This document shows, one piece after another, positions 1,967-25,400 of a stretch of DNA of 64,000 nt. Location: assembly GCA_907165135.1 (NCBI GenBank), contig OU015568.1, positions 11,966,001 to 12,030,000 of the forward strand, in the 5' to 3' direction. A program made the translations under genes and the position numbers. The notes under the pieces were generated by a model. That model saw only the letters and a program-made list of their open reading frames with translations, did no database searches and was not told where the DNA came from. Origin of the DNA: Oikopleura dioica (taxonomy: Eukaryota; Animalia; Chordata). Position 1 is the stretch's first letter. Every line of letters begins with the position of its first letter.

Positions 1967-4900
1967 ATGGTAAGAAATTACAATCATACACGGTCCTCCA
2001 ATTTGGGTTTTCTTCCGGCACCGAAGTTTTTTTGAACAAAAAGTTCTAAACGATACAAAATATTATGTTTCTAAAAGGACCACTAGAAAATTCGGGGATC
2101 TTTTTTCACAGGGAATTATCGAAAGGTCTGTCCTATTAGCGTCTCAAGATCAAACGTGCCCAAATATTCTCCGTTTAGGGATTAGCGGCGGGCCCCCGCC
2201 TCGCACATGTCTTCTTAGGCAGCCAGGGCCAGGAAGTTTGTCTAACAAGTAAAAAGGGATACCGATAAAGATTACACATTCGTCTAGAGTTACCAATTTC
2301 ATTTATCCCCTTCAGCCTTAGCCGGATTTGGCGAGCACAAGATAGGGCAAATTTTGATTTCAGTCGCGCCAAGAGTGACTTATCCCGCCCTTGATCGTAT
2401 TTATCTTTTCATTCTTGTTAACTTGTGAGAAAATCGAGCGGCACGGATTAACTCACTCACTGGAGCTATTCTGAAAAGATTGCGTGAATAAGCAGAATAT
2501 GCATGGGAACTTGCCTGGAAAGATAAAGCTACCTCCTCTGATAAACGTTTTACTGCCGGATTTTGTTTTTGATAGGGAAGGAAAACAAAACCAAACAAAC
2601 TGTCTGCTCCCTCAAATTAGCCCGTTAGCGTAAACACAAATCACCGAGATCGAAACCGACAATATCTTACGCGGCGGAATGTGTGCCCCTTACTTGACCG
2701 CAATCAAGCGAAATGTTTAATTATATAGTGAAATATTTCGCCTTTTTCGGCGTTTGCGGTTCAACCCCTTAATACCTCCGCCGCCGCCGTGGCGTTGAAT
2801 TTGGCGCCAAAATCTTAACAAATTAGGCCCCACTTCCGTTTTGCATTTTGTAAGTGGCTAACCCTTCTCTTTCAGAAATCGCTGCTCATCACACTCTGTG
2901 GGATGGCCGCTGCCTGCCCAAGTATGTGCAGGTGCACTGCATCCGGACGCGTCTTCTGCCAAGACAAGGGACTCACCGAAGTACCCGCCAACATTCCTGC
3001 CGACGTCAAATATCTCTACCTGCAGGATAACAAGATTTTGAACTCGCCCGAGCTCAACGAGCGTCTCGCCAGACTTCCACGACTTGAGCGACTCTTTCTC
3101 TACAACAACCTTCTCGAGCACGTCCCCAGCTTCGATTCTTCCACCCTCAACGAACTGGTCCTTTACGGCAACCAAATCCGAAGCGTGGACGGCCTTGGAA
3201 ACCTCCTAGCCTCAGGACTCTCAACCTTGAGCGAAACGAGCTGAGTGGTACTGTCGGTGACTTCTCTTCCCTTCACTCCCTGGAAGTGCTCTTTCTCCGC
3301 AAGAACTCGATCTCGACCTTCCCAAAACAACTGCCCGCCAGTCTGGAGGAGCTTTATTTGTCCGACAATCGCCTCAACCAAATGCACTTGGAGTCTGTCC
3401 GTCACTTGAGCAATTTGAAAACTCTTCACCTTGACAGCAACCAGCTCAATGACCAGGTAAATACAAAAACTTTTAAATGATGGATACTTGGAACTAGTTT
3501 AAAGAACTTCAAACTTTGTTTGTGTGAAAGGCACCTTGCGCGGCGTAAACGGAGCGCGTAAGATAATGTAGCGGCAGGCAAGTGCTGCTTATCGCATTTT
3601 CAAAAGTATTTAGCTCTGTTTGGGAACCTACCACTCGAGATTGAATTCACAATTGATTCCCCCAATGACCTCTCATACATACTTAGAACCTGTAGTTTAC
3701 GTTTTCTTCTTCAAATATCTTACTTTTATATTAAGTCTTTCGAGCAGGATATCTTTGGATACCTTGTCAGCCTTGAAGAGCTCGATCTCAGCCAGAACAA
3801 CCTGCGAACGTTTCCTTCCGGTCTCCAGACTCGAGTCGAGAGCGTCAACCTGGCCCGAAATATGATCGAATTCGTGGAAAAGACATCCGTCCACGGACTC
3901 CAGGCACTTCGACGTCTCGACCTCGCATTCAATCGTCTCCGATCGATCGAAGACGGTGCCCTTCAAGGTCTCGCCCAGCTCGACTCAATCGACTTTTCCG
4001 GCAACAATTGGTCTTGCGACTGCTACCTCAAGTCCCTCCACAAATTCATCGCCAAAGGCTACCACCGAGGTCAGCAAGGCGATCTCCTCTGCGGCGAATC
4101 TGGTGAACTCACTGGTGTTGAAATCGAGAAGCTCAGCGAATCCGATCTGTCCTGCGACGCCGTCGAGTTTGAAGTTCTTCAACCACGAGAAGGCGAGCTC
4201 TTCATTCAAGTCGCTGATTTTTACAGCCCATCGTACGCTTCTTTCCAGATCAACATTAGCGGCGTCACCCAGTCAGGTAATAAAGCAACCCTAGAACGTC
4301 TCTTTTCCTGTTGTAAACTCTTTTGAAAAAGAGCTTCCCAGGAAATCATAGTACACATTATTTTATTGACCAATTATTTACAAGCTATTTCAGGAAACGT
4401 CAACCTCATCGAATCGAAAAGGATCACTCCCGGAGCCACTCGAACTATCGCGGGCCTTGGAGAATACCCTGAGTACAAGATCTGCATCGAATCCCCCTAC
4501 ACCTGGGACCAGGAAGGCTTCACCTCCCCGTGCCAATCTGCCACTCCTCGAGTCTTCTCTTCCACCCAATCCGAGAAAGTTTCTACTGTTGTCACTGACG
4601 ATGTCGAAACTATCATCGGATTGGTCACCGGTGGTCTGATCGTCATTCTCTCGCTCATCATCGTCGGCGTTCTCTTCTACAAATCCAAGCGATTCCCTTC
4701 TTCCAAGTTTTCTGAAACTACCTTCCTCCCCTCCGGCTCGCTTTCTTTCAACTCGAAGTACGAAACTGGCATCACTCGAACACTCTATGGTCAGCCTGGT
4801 ATGCTCTATCATCCATACACTGTCGGCACTAACTACGGAAACGTCCACCCTGCTACTCTCAACCAGTCTCAACAATCCCAGCAAACTGTCGATGCCGGCA

Positions 4901-13431: not shown

Positions 13432-16400
13432 TCATACAGAAGATAAGAAAAGAGCCGCGCCAGAGAGAAGCCATGGTGATGCGTCAGATCCAAGACCGCT
13501 GAGGACTGCTGGGCATATAAGATTATCGCGGTGTTGATCTTAAAACCATTAATTTCGGCTAAATAATTTTTTATACCGGAATAAAGAGGGAGCGAAGCTG
13601 AATTATCATCCGCAAAAGAGACTCCCATCGGCGGGAGCTCCACAGTTGACTTTGTGTTGATATCGGCATGGGAAAGCTTCGATCTAAAATCAGCGCCAGA
13701 CAAGACAATCCCCGACACTTTGAGCTTGGCACTAGAAGTTGACAGAGTCAACACGGCGTTAGCAGGGGCGTTTTCGTGCAATTGCAAGGCAGCTATCAAC
13801 GCAGACGGGCGGAACATCATGCTAACATTGAGTGACGACGATGATACTGAATAAATTTGATCATTACAAAGGTCAACAATGCGATGATTTTTACCGGAAG
13901 TAATTAAGTAATTCGTTATTTTCGCCAGCTTGTCCAGGAAGGCTATCGGCTCTTCGGGGCCATCCGAGAACGCTCTTAACCAACTTGAAGGCGTTTCTGC
14001 ATCGAGAATTGCTTGAGCTTCCGCTTTAGCTTTGGAAGTCACTAAACCCCGCAGAGCAGATTCCATGCCATTTATTGAATCGTTGACGACTTTGAAAACT
14101 GACTTCAACAAGCGCTTTTCACCGATTAAAAAGCTCTCTATCGGCTGAGGAGAGGATTGAGACACATCAAGAGCGGATATAGCTTCAATGGTAGATCGAC
14201 TGAATAACCTAGTATTGGGATCTTAGATTCGTTAGACTCCCTCGTCCCCTAAGGTCACTTGCTTATCTAGATCGAGCTTTGCTCGGTCGCCGCCGTGTCA
14301 AAGATACTTTACTCGTTTTCTTCACTCGTCCAGATATAGAGAGCAGGCAAACTACGCTAGAAGTGGGAGATTCAGCAGAAGCTAGGATCCCTTCAGTGGT
14401 ATCAGAGTAGTCCCGTTGGAGAAAAGGTAAATTTTCCGCCATCGACAACCGAAGTTTCGCAACTTGGACGCTGATTGGCCGTCAGCGGAGTCGAGGGGAA
14501 CCGAATCACCAACCGCCACCGCGCCGCCGGAGAAACTCCACTCAGAGAATTTTCCGCGCCGCACCACACCAACACCACCCCGAGCGAGCGCCACCACACG
14601 AGCGCCACCACGACCCACGCGCCGAAAGTCGCGCCCACGCAACCACGCACGCACGCCGGGGAAAACCTAAAATACTCAGAAAAACAGAATTCTTTCGCCA
14701 CTTTTCACCAAAAATCGAGAGAAGTTTACGAAGAATCGACCCTTGGACCAGACCTTGAAATTTCGACAATCGCTGGACAGAGAAATCGTCGGGCGTTTGC
14801 GCAAAAAGGCACCTCAGCTCATCATATTGCGACTTTTAGTCGCAGTATTTTCTGAGGGCCTGAAAGGTAATCCAAGGCCCATAAACCCTTACTGCCGATA
14901 TATTTCGAGCTATGGCGGCGAACAAATCACTGCTAGAAACCGTCACCGAAATAAGAAGCATAAACGATCGAGTAAACTACCTCGAAGAACAAGTGCGAAA
15001 TGACGAATCACTTAAGCCAAGCCTAGAGCCCTTGATCACAGAAAGCAGAGTAAAATTAGAACAGCTCAGTACAACGCTTCTTACCTGCGAGCTCGATCAA
15101 GGAAAAGAATCTACGAATGCTACAATGAGAGAAGAAGCATGGGTGGCCACTACCTGGTCTCGTCACGTCCAAGACTTGCCGAAGCTGGACGCCGCATGCA
15201 ACACATCTTTCAACACCTTCTTGGGCAGAGCCGACATTTATCACCGCGCCTACGTCCGCGACAGACCTTCACGTGAACAGCCTTTCATCGCAGCAGTGTA
15301 CAGCCACTTCGACTTGAACATCGAACGCTCACTTGGAACCGAATTTCTGAATTGTCAAGACTGGAAATCGGCCAAGGCGCTGCTAGAGAAATCATTCGCC
15401 GCGAAGAGTCACTACTTACTGAAGCTAAGCGAAGTTTTCGACGTCGAATACGACCATTCGAAGCCGTTTGCACACTACACCGCCAACGTCTTGCAAAAGA
15501 TGAACGAGGCGAAGCAAGCGACTTTGAACTCTTACCGACAAGAGAAGTCAGCCGACGCCGGGGTCGATGAAATATTCGACATATTCTCGACGATGATGCT
15601 GTACTTGAATCTTAGGAAAGAAGAACCAGACGTTTTCAACGCAATCCTTCCAAGCCTATCAAAAGTTTACGATATCAACGAACTCTGCCGTCTCGCCCAA
15701 TCCACAAGACAGAATCGAGTTGACAGCGCGACCGTCTCCCAGCACTTCAACAGAAATAAGAACAAAAAGAAGAAGAATGCTAAGCGCGCCAGCACCGATT
15801 CTAAGGATGGGAAAGACGATAAACAACCAGAATCCAAGAAGATTAATACGACTAAGAACGTCGAAGATTTCCAACCATTCGATGTTCACTTTTACACAGT
15901 GAAGAAGAAGCGACCAGGAAAGGCTTATTTCGCTTCGGCTACCATCATTACGGGCTCTAAAAGTTTTGACGTATCGATGGAAGTCGACAGCGGAGCCGAG
16001 TCCTCCTGTCTGTCCGCTGCTTACGTTCCCGACAAATTTCTCCAGATGCTGAAGCCCTGCCCCTTCAAGGTCACCGGTTTCAGCCCAAATATCCCCGCCG
16101 AGCAGCCGAGGGGTATCCTTCCCTGCCGCTTATCATTCAATGGTGGCCCTGCATTCTCCTTGAATCTCACCATCATGCCAGGCAGTAAATACCCAAGTCT
16201 ACTGGGCCGCGATATACTAGAGAATGCGATGACGGACAGCTTCACAGTCGACAATAAGAATCGTACTCTCTCATTTTGCTACAACGAAGCCTTCACACAA
16301 ACTGAGACTCAAGTGGTGAAGCTGGACGGAGTGAAGCGGACCAAAATCAAGAAATACTTGACGACTAGATCAGCGGTCAAAGACAGCGATCGGTCCCGCA

Positions 16401-19400
16401 CTCAACCACCACGAGAAGTCCCAAAGCTGGACGCGCCGAACAAGAACGCAGCCAGGTGCCCCATTCAGCTAGCGAAGCAAAAACTCGGAATAACCCTACC
16501 AGCAGACGCAGACCCGGGGCAAAAGAAGATGGTCGCCGAGCTGTGTTTGGAATTCGACGACAGATTCGGCTGCGACGGTCAAAAAATGGGTGAATTCCCG
16601 TTCGAGATCGAAATCCCGACTGATGGTACGAGTCGAAACATCAGTCAACACCCGATTCCGCAAGCTTTTCATGGTCAGGTCAGCGATCACATCTCCGAAC
16701 TGCTCGAAACGAAAATAATAGAAGAGATCAAAGACCAGAAAGGGTTTAACAGCCCGGTATTGCCTATTCCTAAGAAATCTGGGGAAATGCGCTTCTGCAT
16801 CAACTACAAAAACAGCCTGAACAAATGCCTCTCCGACAAATCCGACCCTTACCATCTCCCAAGCATGGAGGATACGATTGCGAACATTGGACCGGGCAAT
16901 AAGTTTTTCGCCACAGTTGATCTACGAAGTGGATATTGGCAGTGCCCTGTAAAGAAAAGCGACAGGTACAAGACTTCCTTCCAGTGGGGTGGGAAATCTT
17001 ACGCCTTCTGCAGACTACCATTCGGTTATCGATGCTCGGGGAATATATTCTCGCGCGTCGTAAACACAATTCTCGACTCAAGCCCCACCAGGAAAAAGAT
17101 GCTTTCTTATATCGATGACATAGTGTGTTTTGGGAAGACTTTCAGCTGCTATTACAACACTCTCCGAAACCTATTCATCGCGCTCCGCAAGTTTAACGCT
17201 AAACTCAAGGGCGAAAAGTGCTCTTTCCTACAATCCGAAGCTCACTTTTTGGGCCGAATCATCAACGAAGATGGAATCAAACCGGACCCTGCGCAAGTCT
17301 CCGCTCTTCGTCAGATGAAACCCCCACGCTCCCAAAAGGAGTTAGCTTCATTAATCGGGTCATTGAATTGGATCCGAGGTTTTCTAGAAACGAAAATGGG
17401 CGAAGCTATTTCATCCGGTTGCTTCTCGAGCAGAATGAAGCCCATAAACGATGTTCGAAATTCGGCGAACGAAACAAATTGTTTCAAGTGGACCAAAGAA
17501 GCGGATTTGGCGCTCAAGGAAATTCAACGACGACTCTCCGAGACTCCAGTCATAAGTTTTCCTAACTTTGACGAGTCTTTTCATCTCTACACAGACGCGA
17601 GCCTGTACGCAGCGGGTGGCGTCCTGCTACAAGAGTATGGCGGGAGAGTGCACCTAGTAAGCGCGATTTCCCACACCTTCAACAAAGCTGAAAGAAAATG
17701 GAACACTTCAGAAAAGGAAATGTTTAGCATTGTCTGGTGCTGCGAGCGACTGGAAAAGCTCCTGAAAGGTAGATTCTTTCAGATTCACACAGACCACCGA
17801 TCTTTGATCTTCCTACACAAAAAGAAGTTCAAGAATTCTAAAATAAGCCGATGGCAAAGCCGATTGGAAGAATTCGATTTTCACATTGTCTACATCAAGG
17901 GATCAGAAAATCAATTCGCCGACTTTATGAGCCGCAGACCTGGCGAGGACGACAAATCACTTGGATACGACTCTGAGTTTCCCGTTGGTCGCGAGTACGA
18001 AATCGACAAGAATTCACCAGTACGTGTCTTCGTCCCTTTCTGGAACGAAAATCAGTTTCCGGAGAAAATCACTTTATCAGAGGTGAAGATACATAAGGTA
18101 AACGTCAAGGCTATCGCGGCGCCAATGGAGATTCCGTTGGTGTCAGCGAATTATAATAACATTCTGGACTATCAAAGGGAGGACTCTGCTCTGAGTGCAA
18201 TCATCACTTTTCTGGAATCTGGTAAGGAGCCACTGGACATAAAATCGCTGGTGAAGGACTCCGACCACCGACAATCGTCTCTACTCAAGATGGAAAAAGC
18301 TCTGTTCCTGGATAACACTACCGGGTGCTTGATGTGTCAATTCAAATCTGGCGCGCGGGCGGTGGTACCGGAAGCGGTAAAAGTCACTTTCTCTTTCTAG
18401 CTCACGACTTGTCCGGTCATCTGGGCGAGCCGCGGACTTTAGAGCGATTAGAGGACGTTTGGTGGCCTTCATTTCAAGACGATGTTTCTAACTACGTCCA
18501 CAGCTGCGTCCCTTGCCTACGCAGAAAAGGATCTGCTGGAACTCGTACCAAACCGCCACTTGGAACCCTTCGTCGTGGAAAAACAGCTGGCGAATCGATT
18601 CAGATCGATTTCGCTTGTATGCCTCCCGCTGGCGGATTCAAGTATTATTTGGTGGTGGCGGACACTTTCTCTCGCTACACTTGGTGCATTCCGACGCGGT
18701 CCGACACTGCTATCCGCGCTGCAAAAGCGCTCATCTACAAGGTCTTCCTTCCCATGGATTTCTTGCCGAAACATCTACACAGTGACAGAGGTACCCACTT
18801 CTGCGCAAGCGTGATTGACGAAATGTGTAAGCTTAACCAGATAAAACATACAATAAGTACCGCATTTCACCCTCAATCAAACGCTTTCGCAGAAAGAGCG
18901 AATCGGACTATCAAAAACAGTCTATTCTGCATGGTCAACTCATCTTCCGGTCGAAAAACTTGGGCCGACTGCGTTCCCCACGTGATGCGCGCGCTCAATA
19001 GTGTGAAAAACAAAAGCACGAAAATTTCACCGCGAGAAGTTTGGTTTGGCCGAAAAAGTACTTTCACCCACTCTACTGGCGCAGAAATGACAGCGGAAAC
19101 ACCTCAGGTGTTTGGTCTCAATGTGGGAGCTTTAGCGAAATCGGCGGAAGCCATTGTGAAAACTGCGATGGAAGCTGCTGACCGAGCCATGGAGCACAGG
19201 CTGAAAAACGAGCCTAAGCCGAGACCAATCCCCGCTGGCGCTGTCGTGTACATTAAGCGAGAAAACCTGACCGACGCTAAAAGCAAGAAGGAACGCTGGG
19301 TAGGTCCCCTGAAAGCCGTTTCGAGCAACGACTGGGTCGTCATGGTCGAAGATAAAAAAGGACAACGTGATTTCATCCATCGAGAACACGTGGTTCACGC

Positions 19401-22400
19401 CGCAGAACGAAATCACGACTTACGCTGGATTGATTACTACGAGGCCGAGTACGTATTCCCACATTTAACCGAAATCGTTAAGTCGAAAGTCCCACAAAAA
19501 TCGCCTGTTCCTACTTCCAAACCGATGGAAAAGTCCGGGTCGAAGTCGCATGGGGGGAGGAAATCTTCTCAGGTCGCGTCGACTCCGATGGTTGCTATGG
19601 AAAAACCGCCAAGATCATCTCTATCACCTATTTTGGAAAGTAGACGCCGATTGGACATGGAAAATCTGGGAGATACAACCGCTACATCTATTTTGGACTC
19701 GTCGGTAGCTCCAGCCGAGCCGTCAGATCGCTGGTACTCTGGTGGTACTCTTTATGAAACTGCCGAGGACATGTCAGCTGATGCTACAGTGATTTCGGAG
19801 GTTGCTGCGCCCGACAATAGCCATATGTCAGTCGATAAACAAAATTCAACAGTAGTTGAGGGCTCAGCAACTGAAAACAGCAAGAAAAGAACCCGTCCAA
19901 AGTCTTCACCAGATCGTCAATACTCAGCCGGCGCCGATCCGAATGCGACTTTAACCGAAGTTGGAGCAGCTCATCTCCCGAAACATACAAAACGAGCACA
20001 CCGTGAAACGAGGCCCGTCGAACCTCTAAACATCGGCACAAACTCGGGTCAGTCATACGACTAAGCGCAAGTACTGCCCCACTCAGGTCCCCTATTCATC
20101 GACCGGGGCCTGAAAAGGTACGGAAATTATCACAGTTTACCGTCGCCGACGTATTTTGAGTTCTTCTACATGTGCAGCTACTCCTTCATGTCATCACCGC
20201 TCGGACATCACGAAAACTTCGCATCTGATTCAAGCTTTTTCCCAAAAAAGGGTTTTTTAACGCGAATCAGACTGCCTCGACGTTTCGAACCTGCCATGTT
20301 ACTCATCTTACGCTTATACTCCTGCAAAAATCACACACTTTGGCCTTAGAGGACGTTTCAGTCTCATGGGGGGTATTGGGATCTTAGATTCGTTAGACTC
20401 CCTCGTCCCCTAAGGTCACTTGCTTATCTAGATCGAGCTTTGCTCGGTCGCCGCCGTGTATTTCTCTCCATTCGGTAATTCACGCAGTTCGTGAATTAAC
20501 CTCTATTTTACTCCAGCTCGAAATACAGACGTCAAAGATACTTTACTCGTTTTCTTCACTCGTCCAGATATAGAGAGCAGGCAAACTACGCTAGAAGTGG
20601 GAGATTCAGCAGAAGCTAGGATCCCTTCACTAGTGAAATGTTTCACAACATTGGATGCAGCGGATTCCCATTGACTATCCGCATGTTCTGTTTGTCGAGC
20701 GAGAAGGTTGAGCGATCGGATCGATTCTCGGACGAGCTGCTCCGCAAGAGCTTTGCCAGAGTTCTTCGCGAGTCCAAGATGATCAGAATTACGCGAAACT
20801 GGAAGTTTTGCTGTGTAGCTCAATGCATCGGCCTTGGACTTGACAGAGATCATCTTAGGGAATTTTCCGAAGGATGGACCGTCACGTGACATCGTTTCAT
20901 TCACCATGAGTCGCAAAAGATTGCCATCAAAAGGATTGTGCATTCGACTTCCGTAGATGACTCCCTCGAGCATCTTCTCTGTGATTCCGGGGCGATTCCG
21001 CATCTTTGCAGAAACAGCAAGAGCCGCTCGGATATCGGCGACTGTAAAATCGTACTCTTGGCTCCAACCAAGAGTTCCAAATCCCTTTCGCTCAAGAATA
21101 AGTGAATGGAGAAGTGACAGCTGAAGATGATCAGAAGACATTCGAGAGGGCCATAAGTCGCTGATGCGCTCCATGCTTCTTCTGAGACCAGGAGGAGCTT
21201 CGACGCACATCTTAACTGAGCGCCGAAGAATCGCTGGTGAAAATGTTGAAACAGATTCTGAAGTTAACCACAAACGGAAATCTTCGTGAATATCAGGCGC
21301 AGCGAGGTCCCCTTCAAGCTTTTCAAGCCAGCTGGATGCCAAGTGACAGTTTTTCAACAAAAGCCATTTCCCAGAGCGCAGACATTCTTTGAACACGCTA
21401 AATGTCGCATCGTTGTCCTCTTCTAAAGCCGCCTCGACCAGTGCTTGGCCCTGTGCCTCGGCTAATCCAGCGATGTCATTGGAAGGATCAGCGCCGCCAG
21501 AGAGAATAAAAAGCTTTGGTGTGTCAGCACCACCGACTTGAGAGATGAATTCCATCGCGCCAAGGCCAGATTCAGGCATGTCTGCAATGCGCGATATTAA
21601 ATTTGAAGCAGAAGCGGCGAAACGATCAGGTCTTCGCTGAGCGATAACCGCCATTTGCTCAACCTTTAATGAGGTGTCTATTTTCAATAATATACTGATT
21701 CGATATTGAAATTCATAATTAACAAATAATATTTGTCAAATATATTCGAAATAACAGAACCTTCCCTTCGAAAAATTGCCACCTTTTGGACTTTCATTTT
21801 CTGGATATTCACCGGCGAGCCATGAAGAAAGCTCTCTTTCGCTTGCAGAGAGCTTTTGTGAGAACTCTCGATGCCCCGAAGTCATAATATTAAACCAGTC
21901 CTGACTGGGGAACTCTCTCGGGAATAGTGCTGCGACGAGATGAAGTGATGCTGAAACTTCATGATCTTTTGAAGCCATGTTTTGAACAAAACTGACTACG
22001 AGCTTGATGAATTCTGATTGTAGTTTGTCTACTGGCTTCTGATGGTACTTTTTGAGGATATGATCGAACATGACTGTAATACAGTGCAAGCCAGTTGTGT
22101 ACATGACATCCAAGCTTTGGATGTCTTAGGTGGGTTTCAAAATTACCGGGGCAAAACTACTTTTGCTGTATTTCCGACCAGAGTCATTCAAACCCAGACA
22201 TCCATATATGAGTCGACTTAGAATTTTATGATCTTTGTCTGGAACATTGGAATTTCCGATAACTCAAGAATTGTCGGATTTTTTATCGGTTTTTCCTAGT
22301 TTTTGAGTTATCGGAAAGTCCAATGCTCTAGCAAAAGAGCAGAAAATTCTGAGTCGATACATATATAGATTTCTGGGGTTTGTATGACTCTGATCGAAGC

Positions 22401-25400
22401 TAGAGGGAAAGTAGTTTTGCCCCGGTAATTTTGAAACCCACCTTGGATCTGAAAGAAACTCGTGGCTGCCGATGATGCCAGTGGCGAGTATTTGTTCCGC
22501 TCGATTGCGAGTTCTTCTTTGATTCTCGAGTTCTCATCGAGTGTTTGTTTGATCTCCTTGGCAGATTTCTTCGAGCTTTGGAGGCTGCTGATGAGCTTGT
22601 CGTTGTCAAGAATATTTCCCTCTGATTTGATGAGAGTTTCGAGGAGATCATTTTCAATTTTGATGATTTTGAGACGCAAGTCTTCTTCCTTCTTGACAAG
22701 TGTAGTCATTTTCTCCTCGAGTTCTGGCTGTTCAGCGCGCAGAGCGACGGACAATAGTTGATGTTCAAGACCTTTTCTAGTCATTGAGAAAATAACAGGG
22801 TTCGCAAGGCCAGATATTGATGGTAAATCATCGTATGTAAGAGTTTTTGATGCAAGGAGCAGTTTGAAATTGGGATTGATATCAATCACTTTGTCGCTGA
22901 TTTTGATGCTTGGTCGGGTGCCAATTGTGTGTACATTTGCTTTCAAGACTTCCACGATGAAAGCGGAAAGTTTGGTGATATTCTCAATCATCAACGTTTT
23001 ACCAAATCTTAGAGCAAGTTCGACACTTGACTGGAAAGCATCTGAATGCTCATCTACAGTTTCTATCTTTTGTTCGGCAAAGTAGGCCTTGAGGAAAGTC
23101 TGCGCCCGACCGGATTGATCGATGATCATGGGCGTTTTGGAGAATGACATGAGACTTTCTGTATTTTCCAAAGACAACTGATCGTTTGGCATGCCTTTGT
23201 GGTGATATTCAAGAAGCTTAGCTTCAGTAGAAAGGAATTCGAGGAGTTTGAAGTCTTGGCAATTGTAGCGGAGTTTCCAATCGCTAAATACTTTATTTCT
23301 CTCGACCTCGTGACGGCAAGACAGATAGACAATATGCGCTGCAGCGAGAAGAGATTGGATCGGAAGTTGAATTTGGGTCGTCTGCAGATTTTTAAGTCCT
23401 TCCTTCCATCTCGATTTTTCTTTCGACAAATCTTTTATCAACTTTCCAGCCTTGTGCAATCGCTTGTTCGCGTCTTCTAGGCGGTTTTCAAGTCTGGCTG
23501 CTTCGGAGGTTTTTTGTTCGAATTCACCGCGGAGCACGGCAACGCGTTCTTCTACAGTCGCTATTCCACTTCCTAGTTTCTCAACTTGCAATTCGGCAGC
23601 TCGGAGGCCTCGCAAGAGTTTTTGCTCCTCCTGCTCTAGCGGTGCGATGCGCTCGAGGACTGCTGCGTATTGCACATTCGCTGTTACCCATGCAGCCAGA
23701 GGGGCTGCAGCTACTGAAGCTCGTTTTGCAACGTCTGCTTGGAAAGATTTGGCTTTCTTTTGCATCAAAGCTTCAACAGCTTCTCGTGAGGAAGGAGGAG
23801 TGTTTCTCGCATCAAACTCTCGGATATCGTCCTTTACACCTCGTTTGCCAAGGAACTGCTTCATTCCTGTCCAGGAAGTATCATCATTTCCCATCAGCTT
23901 GAGTACACCTTCCAAAATATCTCGAATAACTTCAGGTGGAGCTCTCAAGTGTCGGATTTCATTGAGCGACGAAGTCTGGATATTGCCAACAGCTTCTTTT
24001 GCTTCATCAATGAGCGGCTGAACTTCACTCAATTCAGCTTCGATCTTTGCTTTTCGACGGTTGATATTTTCGCGTTCCTTGTCCGCGTCTTTCTTACGCT
24101 TCGACATTTCATCTTTTTGCGTTTCCGCGCCGCCCATCGCTTCTTGGATTGCTTGTAGAGCTGCATCAGCTTCTTCTCGTTTTAGTTTCAGAACCTTCTG
24201 CTGCTCAACAACATCCTTTTCGAGCTCTGCAACAGTCTTCCCTGCTTCTGCTAGTTTATGCAGACCAGTTTCCAGTTTAGTCGTCCGTTCAGTAAAGCTG
24301 TTCTTTTTGTTGTCGTAAATTTCGGAGATCGCTTTCAAGAACACTGCATATTGGGCTGGATTCCAACCGTGATCTCGGTGCAATTCTACCGCATGACCTG
24401 AAATTGTCTCTGTTCCTTCTCCAAGAGACAGTCTTTTGTTGGCGACGCTTCTCAGCGTCTCATGTGACCATCGCTGAAGAACGATAATTTTCGACTTTTT
24501 CGTCAGCGCTGGGCATTGATTCCAACACTCTGAGAGTGCCTTACTTCCCGTTTCTAGGGATAGAACTAGGCGGATGTTTTCTTTTGCTCGTTTGACAAAG
24601 AGATCTGTCGCAGTCATGCTCATTGCGCTTGCTTCAGCACGCAGTTGACTTTGATCTATTTCTTCCGCTGACCAAAGACCTGGGACTGTTCCCTGTGCAA
24701 GAAGAGAATTAGCGTAGACGTAAATTTGTCCATTCTCAAGGTGATGTGATTCGATAAGAATCACTACAGACTTGTTTTCAATAGAAGCAGCGCCAAGAGC
24801 GGTGCGGAAGAAATTCTTGACAGCTTTATCAGTGACATTCGTTACCGATGGGGACATTACGTCAAAATGGAGTGAATAGGCGCCTAGCTGGACAGAAGTT
24901 CGACGGCCAGATCCTGATGGACCGATAAGTACGATGTTGCCACCTTTATTTGATAGCTGAGATGTCACCGATACGATGGATTGCGTGAGTTGCTGCGATA
25001 AGACAAGCCCGCCAGTCGGCAAGTCTCGAATTTCACGTTCGAAGTTGCCTGCCGTTTCAAGCAAGCGCTTTTGCAGATCATTCATATCCATTGCATGCAA
25101 CTTTCCGTCTCTCTTAGGAAAGAAAAGCTCTTTCTCCATAGTTGCTCCTTGGAATGCTGTGTCGTAAATTCGCTCGTGATTTTCATCAATCATTCTGTCG
25201 CGGAAAATCCGATCAGCTTCAAACTTCCATATTGCCCAATGGTTTTTGCTCTTGAAGCTTTGACATGCTTTTGCCCACTGATTGAGATGACTCAAGGAAA
25301 AATTGTAGTGTGGCGCTTCCTTGGGTCCCAATTGCGCGGTCAAATTCGAGAAAGCGCGAGCAGTACTATGCGACATATCGTCGTACGGACCATTTGGAAA

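What the first reader, a model, noticed from the sequence alone, without database searches (positions are those of the whole stretch)
22125..22445. Introner-type intron: a DYNC2H1 intron that is exactly one MITE plus its 3-bp target duplication
Seen: on the minus strand the exon reads ...ATC CAA G|gtggg...cccacc taag|AC ATC (FFQIQ-DIQSLDVMY, in frame). The element GGTGGG...CCCACC (22129-22442, 314 bp) has perfect 35-bp TIRs and is flanked by CAA/TAA. The intron (22125-22441) is 317 nt = element + 3. The TIR end supplies the GT donor. The second target copy plus the next exonic G supplies the AG acceptor, so splicing restores the pre-insertion sequence without a scar. Known: this is the mechanism of intron-generating transposons (introners), and GG termini with TWA-like 3-bp TSDs are PIF/Harbinger-like. 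Inference: a recent intron gain by a possibly uncatalogued introner family.
Basis: partly seen in the sequence, partly recalled or inferred. Interest (0 to 1): 0.85.

Follow-up and report, generated by a model that had tools for sequence, protein, structure and literature searches.

The report
Jumping element turned into an intron
A 314-base non-coding jumping element landed in a coding exon of the ciliary dynein motor gene of the Okinawan tunicate Oikopleura dioica and is cut out of the RNA as a new 317-base intron, a known way of making introns seen here while still recent.

Summary
A 314-bp element (22129-22442) has perfect 35-bp terminal inverted repeats and flanks CAA/TAA. It splits a DYNC2H1 exon on the minus strand. 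The GT-AG intron 22125-22441 equals the element plus 3 bases.

Evidence that it is a new intron:
- One RNA contig from a marine metatranscriptome joins 22124 to 22442 exactly.
- Two homologous dyneins align across the junction without a gap.
- A genomic contig from a sister lineage, about 80% identical in DNA, has the undisturbed site ...CAAGAC... with no intron.

The family is small: four copies with this terminus in the 64-Mb assembly. A second copy splits the tripeptidyl-peptidase II catalytic domain. A third lies 9 codons after a candidate start codon of an ankyrin gene. All have the same G|GT...NAG| geometry. This follows from a GGT terminus plus a preferred target C|TNA|G. Seven sister copies with GAG termini cannot give GT-AG, and none lies in an exon.

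No transposase was found, so the PIF/Harbinger assignment rests on TSD, terminal repeats and target alone.

The kind is known: introners, Fritillaria and Styela MITE introns, and transposon-derived introns reported for Oikopleura in 2010. This is a new, unusually well-documented member. The scan has noted similar Harbinger-type and hAT-type cases elsewhere in this genome.

The parts
22129..22442 (.). Non-autonomous DNA transposon (MITE), 314 bp, GGT-type terminus GGTGGGTTTCAAAATTA
   Evidence: A 97% identical copy lies at C5:9661688-9662325. It is homologous along its length to 253-bp GAG-type MITEs.
22129..22163 (+). Left terminal inverted repeat, 35 nt, perfect. It forms the 3' end of the intron in transcript orientation.
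22408..22442 (-). Right terminal inverted repeat, 35 nt, perfect. Its first base (22442) is the last exon base, and bases 22441-22440 are the GT donor.
22443..22445 (-). Exon-side target-site copy CAA (Gln codon)
   Evidence: The empty site in sister lineage L095 also reads CAA.
22126..22128 (-). Intron-side target-site copy TAA. It differs from the exon copy at its first base. Its last A plus G22125 form the AG acceptor.
22125..22441 (-). New GT-AG intron, 317 nt, equal to the element minus its first G plus TAAG
   Evidence: An RNA contig in run X7 joins 22124|22442, reported as 'skips 317, CT..AC' on the + strand. The site is absent from L095.
22442..23699 (-). Verified 3' part of the upstream DYNC2H1 exon (dynein stalk and AAA5). 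The open frame continues upstream to about 25442.
   Evidence: Pfam MT and AAA_9. The best solved structure is human DYNC2H1 at E 5.9e-76, against dynein-1 at 3.3e-54. Open frames are listed.
21766..22124 (-). Downstream DYNC2H1 exon
   Evidence: It aligns from its first residue to P0001 residue 1145, directly after the upstream exon plus the split Asp codon. It is colinear with L095 284-646.

Best explanation
A 314-bp non-autonomous cut-and-paste transposon inserted into a coding exon of the IFT dynein heavy chain gene (DYNC2H1) in the Okinawan Oikopleura dioica lineage. It is a Tourist-like MITE with PIF/Harbinger-type features. It is removed from the pre-mRNA as a 317-nt GT-AG intron, so the mRNA is identical to the pre-insertion sequence.

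The geometry follows from two properties of the family.
1. The terminal repeat starts GGTGGGT. Its first G becomes the last exon base, and GTGGGT serves as the 5' splice site.
2. The element prefers the palindromic target C|TNA|G and duplicates the middle 3 bases. The distal side therefore reads ...CCCACC-TNA-G, which gives an AG acceptor.

Because both the ends and the target are palindromic, the same holds for a gene on either strand.

Shown: the structure, the RNA junction (one contig), the gap-free junction against homologues, the empty site in a sister lineage, and two further copies with the same geometry in or beside coding sequence.

Inferred: that the RNA came from carriers of the insertion; that the intron-side TSD copy changed from CAA to TAA after insertion; that U1 reads GTGGGT; and that the near-perfect hairpin (-181 kcal/mol) brings the two splice sites together.
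For: - Structure.
- RNA: X7 contig 17 (243 nt, 0 mismatches) covers 21966-22124 and then 22442-22525. X7 has no depth inside the element.
- DNA of other individuals holds the insertion. An X6 contig runs 80 nt of exon plus 51 nt of element. X3 contigs run 30 and 27 nt into the element. Neither run shows an empty-site joint.
- Gap-free junction. Upstream exon residue 83 aligns to P0001 residue 1140, so Q86 is 1143 and the split Asp is 1144. Downstream exon residue 1 aligns to 1145. P0006 gives the same result at 3449/3452.
- Sister lineage. L095 is genomic, because it continues through the intergenic spacer into the next gene with an unspliced intron. It reads ...ATTCAAGACATT... at the site. 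L095 1-286 aligns to window 22727-22442, and L095 284-646 to 22127-21765.
- Purifying selection. Between lineages, 45 of 50 exon differences are at third codon positions. In X6, 7 of 8 exon SNPs are at third positions.
- Family. Four elements carry the exact 17-nt terminus. The TPP2 copy has open frames of 200 and 442 codons on its two sides. These match Drosophila TPP2 residues 46-243 and 257-699.
- Target. The base before the TSD is C at 10 of 11 complete copies. The base after it is G at 8 of 11. G000 holds an empty site CTTAG where a wild RNA contig carries an insertion.
- Contrast. None of 7 complete GAG-terminus sister copies has open frames on both sides.
Against: - The RNA evidence is one metatranscriptome contig of depth 2 from unknown wild animals. 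An allele lacking the element would give the same contig.
- The bulk RNA run X21 laid no reads, so it was no test.
- The two TSD copies differ (CAA and TAA).
- The acceptor AAG and the preceding tract are weak by general metazoan standards.
- In the folded pre-mRNA the donor is base-paired with the 3' arm.
- The same gene copy carries a 6.4-kb LTR retrotransposon in the next-but-one exon. This particular haplotype may therefore be non-functional for another reason.
Confidence: 0.82

Rival explanations
1. The element is a disruptive exonic insertion that makes a null or leaky allele and is not spliced. On this reading the joined RNA contig comes from wild animals whose allele lacks the element.
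For: - Only one RNA contig, of depth 2, shows the joint, and its donors are unknown.
- The family is polymorphic in the wild.
- The same assembled gene copy also carries an LTR retrotransposon inside a coding exon. This haplotype may therefore be degenerate.
Against: - The insertion is present in individuals from two further studies, X3 and X6, and no empty-site contig appears in either.
- The gene is under strong purifying selection within and between lineages.
- Retention would truncate the motor before AAA6.
- A second copy sits inside the catalytic domain of TPP2 with intact long frames on both sides.
Confidence: 0.08
2. The intron is real and derives from the MITE, but it is a chance one-off. 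On this reading the family has no built-in intron-making property, and the other copies are irrelevant.
For: - There are only four copies in the assembly, and one is non-coding.
- The coding status of the 9-codon piece upstream of the ankyrin copy is unverified.
- The tally of 2-3 of 4 GGT copies against 0 of 7 GAG copies in exons is statistically weak.
Against: - All four copies show C-NNA|GGT...ACC|NNA-G.
- The flanking C and G also occur in the non-coding GAG-type relatives, so they reflect target choice rather than survivorship.
- A separate family at C1:1687865-1688213 with a GGTGGA terminus has the same C-TAA...TAA-G flanks.
Confidence: 0.08
3. An older intron already existed at this position and was later colonised by the MITE.
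For: MITEs often sit in introns. One related element elsewhere in this genome is reported inside an intron.
Against: - The intron is exactly the element plus 3 bases, which leaves no room for an earlier intron.
- The sister lineage has no intron at the site.
Confidence: 0.02

Closest known systems
Introners of Micromonas pusilla and Aureococcus anophagefferens (Huff, Zilberman and Roy 2016, cited in PMC13326754) and the 548 families of Gozashti et al. 2022 (PMC9860276)
   Same: A non-autonomous DNA transposon with terminal repeats and a TSD whose ends coincide with intron ends. One splice site is carried by the element and the other is recruited from the TSD and flank. The 2022 paper describes the 'NAGgy...nag' pattern and families that carry the 5' site and co-opt the 3' site. 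Splicing leaves no scar.
   Different: This family has 4 copies, of which 2-3 are intronic. The 2022 screen required at least 4 introns per family and reports 5 to more than 2,000 copies per genome. The host here is a chordate. The main text of neither the 2022 nor the 2025 paper names Oikopleura.
MITE-derived non-canonical introns of the larvacean Fritillaria borealis (Henriet et al. 2019, as summarised in PMC11282704)
   Same: A larvacean tunicate. The introns carry terminal repeats and TSDs, sit at species-specific positions, and are taken as recent gains from MITEs.
   Different: The Fritillaria introns are mostly AG-AC or AG-AT and need a modified spliceosome. The intron here is canonical GT-AG, with the donor written into the terminal repeat.
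Transposon-insertion intron gains in Oikopleura dioica (Denoeud et al. 2010, as cited in PMC3296678 and PMC3443670)
   Same: Same species complex and same proposed route of intron gain.
   Different: The original paper could not be read here. Whether this family or this locus was among its cases is unknown. The present case is in the Okinawan lineage, which was sequenced later (PMC8008620).
PIF/Harbinger superfamily and its Tourist-like MITEs
   Same: - A 3-bp TSD centred on TTA/TAA.
- A terminal repeat starting G...GTT, compared with the G(N)5GTT motif and 3-bp TAA/TTA TSD described in PMC2213677.
- A preferred extended palindromic target. From memory, maize PIF prefers CWCTTAGWG; I could not confirm this in the library.
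   Different: - The TSD is looser (TCA, TGA, CTA and CAA also occur).
- The motif is G(N)4GTT.
- No DDE_Tnp_4 transposase was detected in the assembly.
- No copy has coding capacity.
Introners of the ascidian Styela clava (Gozashti et al. 2025, PMC12130899)
   Same: A tunicate host in which introner insertions were validated with RNA-seq and orthologue comparison.
   Different: It is a different species.

Membership tests
Introner (intron-generating transposon) | Intron boundaries coincide with the ends of a repeated element, give or take the TSD | tested here: met
   The intron 22125-22441 is the element 22129-22442 shifted by one base plus the 3-bp TSD copy.
Introner (intron-generating transposon) | The element is removed from RNA at those boundaries | tested here: met
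   One RNA contig (X7, depth 2, 243 nt, no mismatches) joins 22124|22442. The support is thin, and the genotype of the RNA donors is unknown.
Introner (intron-generating transposon) | Several near-identical introns in unrelated genes (at least 4 per family in Gozashti et al. 2022) | tested here: not met
   The assembly has four elements with the exact terminus. Two are in coding exons (DYNC2H1, TPP2), one is at the start of an ankyrin gene, and one is non-coding.
Introner (intron-generating transposon) | The intron is absent at the orthologous position in relatives (recent gain) | tested here: met
   The sister-lineage genomic contig L095 has the uninterrupted site.
PIF/Harbinger superfamily (Tourist-like MITE) | 3-bp TSD, typically TTA or TAA | tested here: met
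   All TSDs are 3 bp. They read TTA x2, TAA x3 and TCA x2 in GAG-type copies, and TCA, TGA, CTA and CAA/TAA in GGT-type copies. One empty site reads CTTAG.
PIF/Harbinger superfamily (Tourist-like MITE) | Terminal repeat with the G(N)5GTT-type motif | tested here: inconclusive
   The termini GGTGGGTT and GAGCCGTT give G(N)4GTT, one base shorter than the plant motif in PMC2213677.
PIF/Harbinger superfamily (Tourist-like MITE) | An autonomous partner encoding a DDE_Tnp_4 transposase (and a Myb-like ORF1) with the same terminal repeats | tested here: not met
   PF13359 gave no match in the 64-Mb assembly. All 28 hits to the terminal-repeat core belong to elements of 3.1 kb or less. The 3.1-kb element has no ORF over 112 aa and no Pfam match.
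Cytoplasmic dynein 2 heavy chain (DYNC2H1) | Dynein motor domains, with the best match to dynein-2 rather than dynein-1 or axonemal chains | tested here: met
   Pfam MT and AAA_9. Human DYNC2H1 scores E 5.9e-76, dynein-1 3.3e-54, and axonemal chains 1e-44 or weaker.

The most novel reading that the evidence does not exclude
The Okinawan Oikopleura dioica lineage carries active Harbinger-like MITE lineages that work as scarless intron generators. Their terminal repeats begin GGTGG, and their palindromic target is C|TNA|G. Together these make every exonic insertion, on either strand, a ready-made GT-AG intron. On this reading intron gain is going on now in a culturable chordate, is polymorphic in wild populations, and contributes to the extreme intron turnover of larvaceans. 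The GGT terminus would then have been favoured over the sister GAG terminus because it lets copies survive in the gene-dense genome.
Probability: 0.4. Interest if true: 0.7.

Novelty: new member of a known kind. Interest (0 to 1): 0.58.

Why it matters
How new spliceosomal introns arise is best answered by catching gains while their origin is still readable. Here all of the following are visible at one locus in an essential, strongly constrained gene of a chordate that can be bred in the laboratory:
- the donor element;
- its target-site duplication;
- the empty site in a sister lineage;
- an RNA junction;
- sister insertions in other genes.

Oikopleura is known for having replaced most ancestral introns. 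A transposon whose ends and target choice jointly encode both splice sites gives a concrete, testable source for part of that turnover. The natural pair of GGT-ended and GAG-ended sister families offers a built-in control.

Tried and rejected
- Raw RNA reads of run X21 laid nothing at 90% likeness, so this was no test.
- A scan of JGI metagenome contigs for the 26-nt terminus found nothing.
- PF13359 (DDE_Tnp_4) gave no match in the assembly.
- The 3.1-kb relative at C1:14371660-14374803 looked like a candidate autonomous copy. It has 322-nt terminal repeats at 97%, no ORF over 112 aa, and no Pfam match.
- Protein-database searches with the two exons, meant to find junction-spanning products, did not help. 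They returned a 58% relative and a prokaryote-style ORF call that runs into the next intron.
- The representative library held no self-lineage protein.
- Three flanks of other insertions seen in X3 and X6 were not found in the assembly.
- Rfam gave only far sub-threshold matches to long-hairpin plant miRNA models (68.9 bits against a gathering score of 230). I reject these as generic hairpin likeness.
- An alternative register (element GTGGG...CCCACCT with an exact TSD of AAG) fits two copies. I reject it because the sister family fixes the terminus 9 bases outside the shared core.
- An orientation bias of the genic copies was considered and dropped. The arm of the C2 copies matches both arms of the window element about equally, at 78% and 80%.
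- Denoeud et al. 2010 could not be read. The PIF target CWCTTAGWG could not be confirmed in the library.
Exons were searched one by one, and continuity was read from coordinates.
Full report
**1. Observation**

On the minus strand the sequence reads ...TTTCAGATCCAAG|GTGGGTTT...AAACCCACCTAAG|ACATCCAAAGC.
- The element GGTGGG...CCCACC occupies 22129-22442 (314 bp).
- Its outer 35 nt are perfectly complementary.
- The inverted repeat continues to 68 nt at 88%. A second pair of 81-nt arms (83%) makes the element nearly a full palindrome.
- The 32-nt terminus occurs only at these two places in the window. None is expected by chance.
- The flanking triplets are CAA (exon side) and TAA (intron side).
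- The GT-AG interval 22125-22441 is 317 nt. Removing it keeps the frame...SFFQIQ, a split Asp codon G|AC, then IQSLDVMY....

**2. Organism and gene**

The window's genome has 64.28 Mb in 19 sequences. This matches the published Okinawan Oikopleura dioica assembly OKI2018_I69, which has 64.3 Mb in 19 scaffolds (PMC8008620).

The upstream exon carries the dynein stalk and AAA5 domains. It matches human cytoplasmic dynein 2 heavy chain best, at E 5.9e-76. Dynein-1 scores 3.3e-54 and axonemal chains score lower.

Continuity was read from coordinates.
- In homologue P0001 the upstream exon aligns up to residue 1140 at its 83rd residue. Its last full codon therefore falls at 1143 and the split Asp at 1144.
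- The downstream exon starts at 1145.
- P0006 gives the same result at 3449 and 3452.

The junction is gap-free.

**3. RNA**

In an oligo-dT marine metatranscriptome (X7), one 243-nt contig with no mismatch covers 21966-22124 and continues at 22442-22525. The tool reports it as 'skips 317, CT..AC' on the + strand, which is GT..AG on the gene strand. X7 has no depth inside the element.

DNA runs from two other studies hold the insertion at this locus.
- An X6 contig spans 80 nt of exon and 51 nt of element.
- X3 contigs reach 30 and 27 nt into the element. That is just under the tool's 31-letter bridging rule, as expected where unitigs stop at a repeat.
- Neither run shows an empty-site joint.

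The raw RNA run X21 laid nothing, so it is no test. The RNA support is therefore real but thin, and the genotype of the RNA donors is unknown.

**4. Sister lineage**

A JGI metagenome contig, L095, encodes the same protein stretch at 94% amino-acid identity and about 80% DNA identity.

It is genomic DNA, not cDNA. It runs through the stop codon, the 3' spacer and into the next gene with an unspliced 50-nt GT-AG intron. It is colinear with the window down to 12620.

At the site it reads ...TTCCATATTCAAGACATTCAAAGT..., which is the undisturbed target with CAA.

Between the two lineages 45 of 50 differences in the last 285 nt of the exon are at third codon positions. In X6, 7 of 8 exon SNPs are also at third positions. 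The gene is therefore under purifying selection.

Third positions differ at about 47% between the lineages. The window element and its C5 sister copy differ by only 3%. The insertion is therefore far younger than the lineage split. This polarises the difference as a gain.

**5. The family**

The exact 17-nt terminus GGTGGGTTTCAAAATTA defines four elements in the assembly.

| Copy | Location | Size | Context | Flanks |
|---|---|---|---|---|
| Window | C1 (window 22129-22442) | 314 bp | DYNC2H1 coding exon | C-CAA / TAA-G |
| C5 | C5:9661688-9662325 | 638 bp | Non-coding; 97% identical ends plus about 330 bp of extra interior | C-TGA / TGA-G |
| C2a | C2:1927641-1927893 | 253 bp | TPP2 coding exon | C-TCA / TCA-G |
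| C2b | C2:10464447-10464698 | 252 bp | Start of an ankyrin-repeat gene | C-CTA / CTA-G |

The C2a copy lies between open frames of 200 and 442 codons. These match Drosophila tripeptidyl-peptidase II residues 46-243 and 257-699, and Pfam Peptidase_S8 and TPPII domains. It therefore splits the catalytic domain. The frames join as ...EETQ|LNYNF... under G|GT...TCAG| splicing.

The C2b copy lies 9 codons after a candidate ATG of an ankyrin-repeat gene, with the same geometry. The short upstream piece cannot be verified by homology.

All four copies have a 3-bp TSD preceded by C and followed by G.

**6. Relatives and target**

A shared sub-terminal core, CAAAATTACCGGGGCAA, finds 28 termini in the genome. 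Most of them end GAGCC or GAGAC rather than GGTGG.

The 253-bp GAG-type MITEs are homologous to the C2 copies along their whole length. They differ mainly in the outer 9 bases. This fixes the register of the window element's end.

The seven complete GAG-type copies have TSDs TCA, TAA, TAA, TCA, TAA, TTA and TTA.

Over the 11 complete copies the base before the TSD is C in 10, and the base after it is G in 8. The target C|TNA|G is therefore a property of the transposition reaction, not only of survivorship.

One RNA contig in X7 carries a related insertion at C4:12664238. There the assembly has the empty site ...AATA-CTTAG-CATT.... This shows both the target and an insertion polymorphism.

None of the seven GAG-type copies has open frames on both sides; the best minimum is 27 codons.

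**7. Mechanism**

- Before insertion the target reads X-NNA-G-Y.
- After insertion it reads X-NNA-[GGT...ACC]-NNA-G-Y.
- Splicing after the element's first G and after the distal AG yields X-NNA-G-Y again.

A GAG terminus cannot do this. A GA donor with the AG acceptor would delete one base, and the scarless register would need AG-AG ends.

The donor GTGGGT departs from GTRAGT only at position +4.

The transcript folds into a hairpin of -180.7 kcal/mol (z = -23.6). The hairpin juxtaposes the two sites but also pairs the donor with the 3' arm. I infer that the donor is recognised co-transcriptionally, before the 3' arm is made.

The mismatch between the TSD copies is best explained as a C-to-T change in the intron-side copy after insertion. 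The exon copy and the sister-lineage empty site both read CAA, and TAA in the exon would be an in-frame stop.

**8. Superfamily**

Three features are PIF/Harbinger-like (PMC2213677): the 3-bp TNA duplication, a terminal repeat of the G...GTT type, and an extended palindromic target. The CWCTTAGWG target of maize PIF is from memory and could not be confirmed in the library.

No DDE_Tnp_4 domain was found in the assembly, and no copy has coding capacity. Membership therefore rests on ends and target only. The mobilising enzyme is unknown.

**9. What is known**

- Introners with exactly this logic are established in algae and many other eukaryotes (PMC9860276). The element carries one splice site and the TSD and flank supply the other, without a scar.
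- In tunicates, MITE-derived introns are described for Fritillaria borealis, and introners were validated in Styela clava.
[quoted passage not shown] The original paper could not be read.
[quoted passage not shown] This family would fail that filter.
- Earlier notes of this scan describe similar cases in the same genome. One is a Harbinger-type family with terminus GGTGGACTT and flanks C-TAA...TAA-G, which I checked. Others are several hAT-type MITEs in exons, mostly without RNA evidence.

I therefore rate this as a new, well-documented member of a known kind.

**10. Caveats**

- The RNA evidence is a single low-depth contig.
- The family is tiny.
- The same assembled gene copy carries a 6.4-kb LTR retrotransposon in a downstream coding exon, with a 5-bp ACTAG duplication. 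It is absent from L095. This haplotype may be defective for an unrelated reason.
- None of these affects the structural conclusion. The first is what a targeted RT-PCR would settle.

Noticed in passing
window 14209-20634 (minus strand): A 6.4-kb LTR retrotransposon sits inside a downstream coding exon of the same DYNC2H1 gene. It is flanked by a 5-bp ACTAG duplication, and its repeated end segments are 100% identical. It is absent from the sister-lineage contig L095. Its ends offer no GT donor, so this haplotype may be a null allele.
   Followed up: partly
window 21664-21765 (minus strand): A 102-nt interruption between ...TTTTTCGAAG and GTTGAGCAA... is absent from L095. The only G*-AG register gives a non-canonical GG-AG intron. 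This may be another lineage-specific intron. I did not check it for terminal repeats or a TSD.
   Followed up: partly
L095:1-3285 (JGI contig Ga0115008_10044346): A sister-lineage genomic contig in which the last 770 codons of DYNC2H1 have no intron at all. It then shows the same neighbouring gene as in the window. Exon DNA identity is about 80%, with differences almost all at third codon positions.
   Followed up: partly
G000 C1:1475439, C4:5113774, C4:9281635, C4:11760942, C5:9842057, C5:7469514: A sister MITE family of mostly 253 bp with termini GAGCC or GAGAC followed by GTTAC, and TNA duplications. All copies are in non-coding contexts. Five further single termini share one identical 35-nt flank, so they appear to sit inside a larger repeat that multiplied.
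   Followed up: partly
G000 C1:14371660-14374803 (L059): A 3.1-kb non-autonomous relative with 322-nt terminal repeats at 97%, a TTA duplication, and internal 21-nt tandem-like repeats. It has no recognisable coding capacity.
   Followed up: yes
G000 C4:12664233-12664267 (L093): An empty target ...AATA-CTTAG-CATT... in the assembly. A wild metatranscriptome contig (X7) carries a related GGT-type terminus at this place, so the insertion is polymorphic and transcribed.
   Followed up: partly
   Followed up: partly
window 22175-22398: The hairpin core gives sub-threshold Rfam matches to plant miRNA precursor models that are themselves long hairpins (best 68.9 bits against a gathering score of 230). 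This is a generic likeness, not membership.
   Followed up: yes
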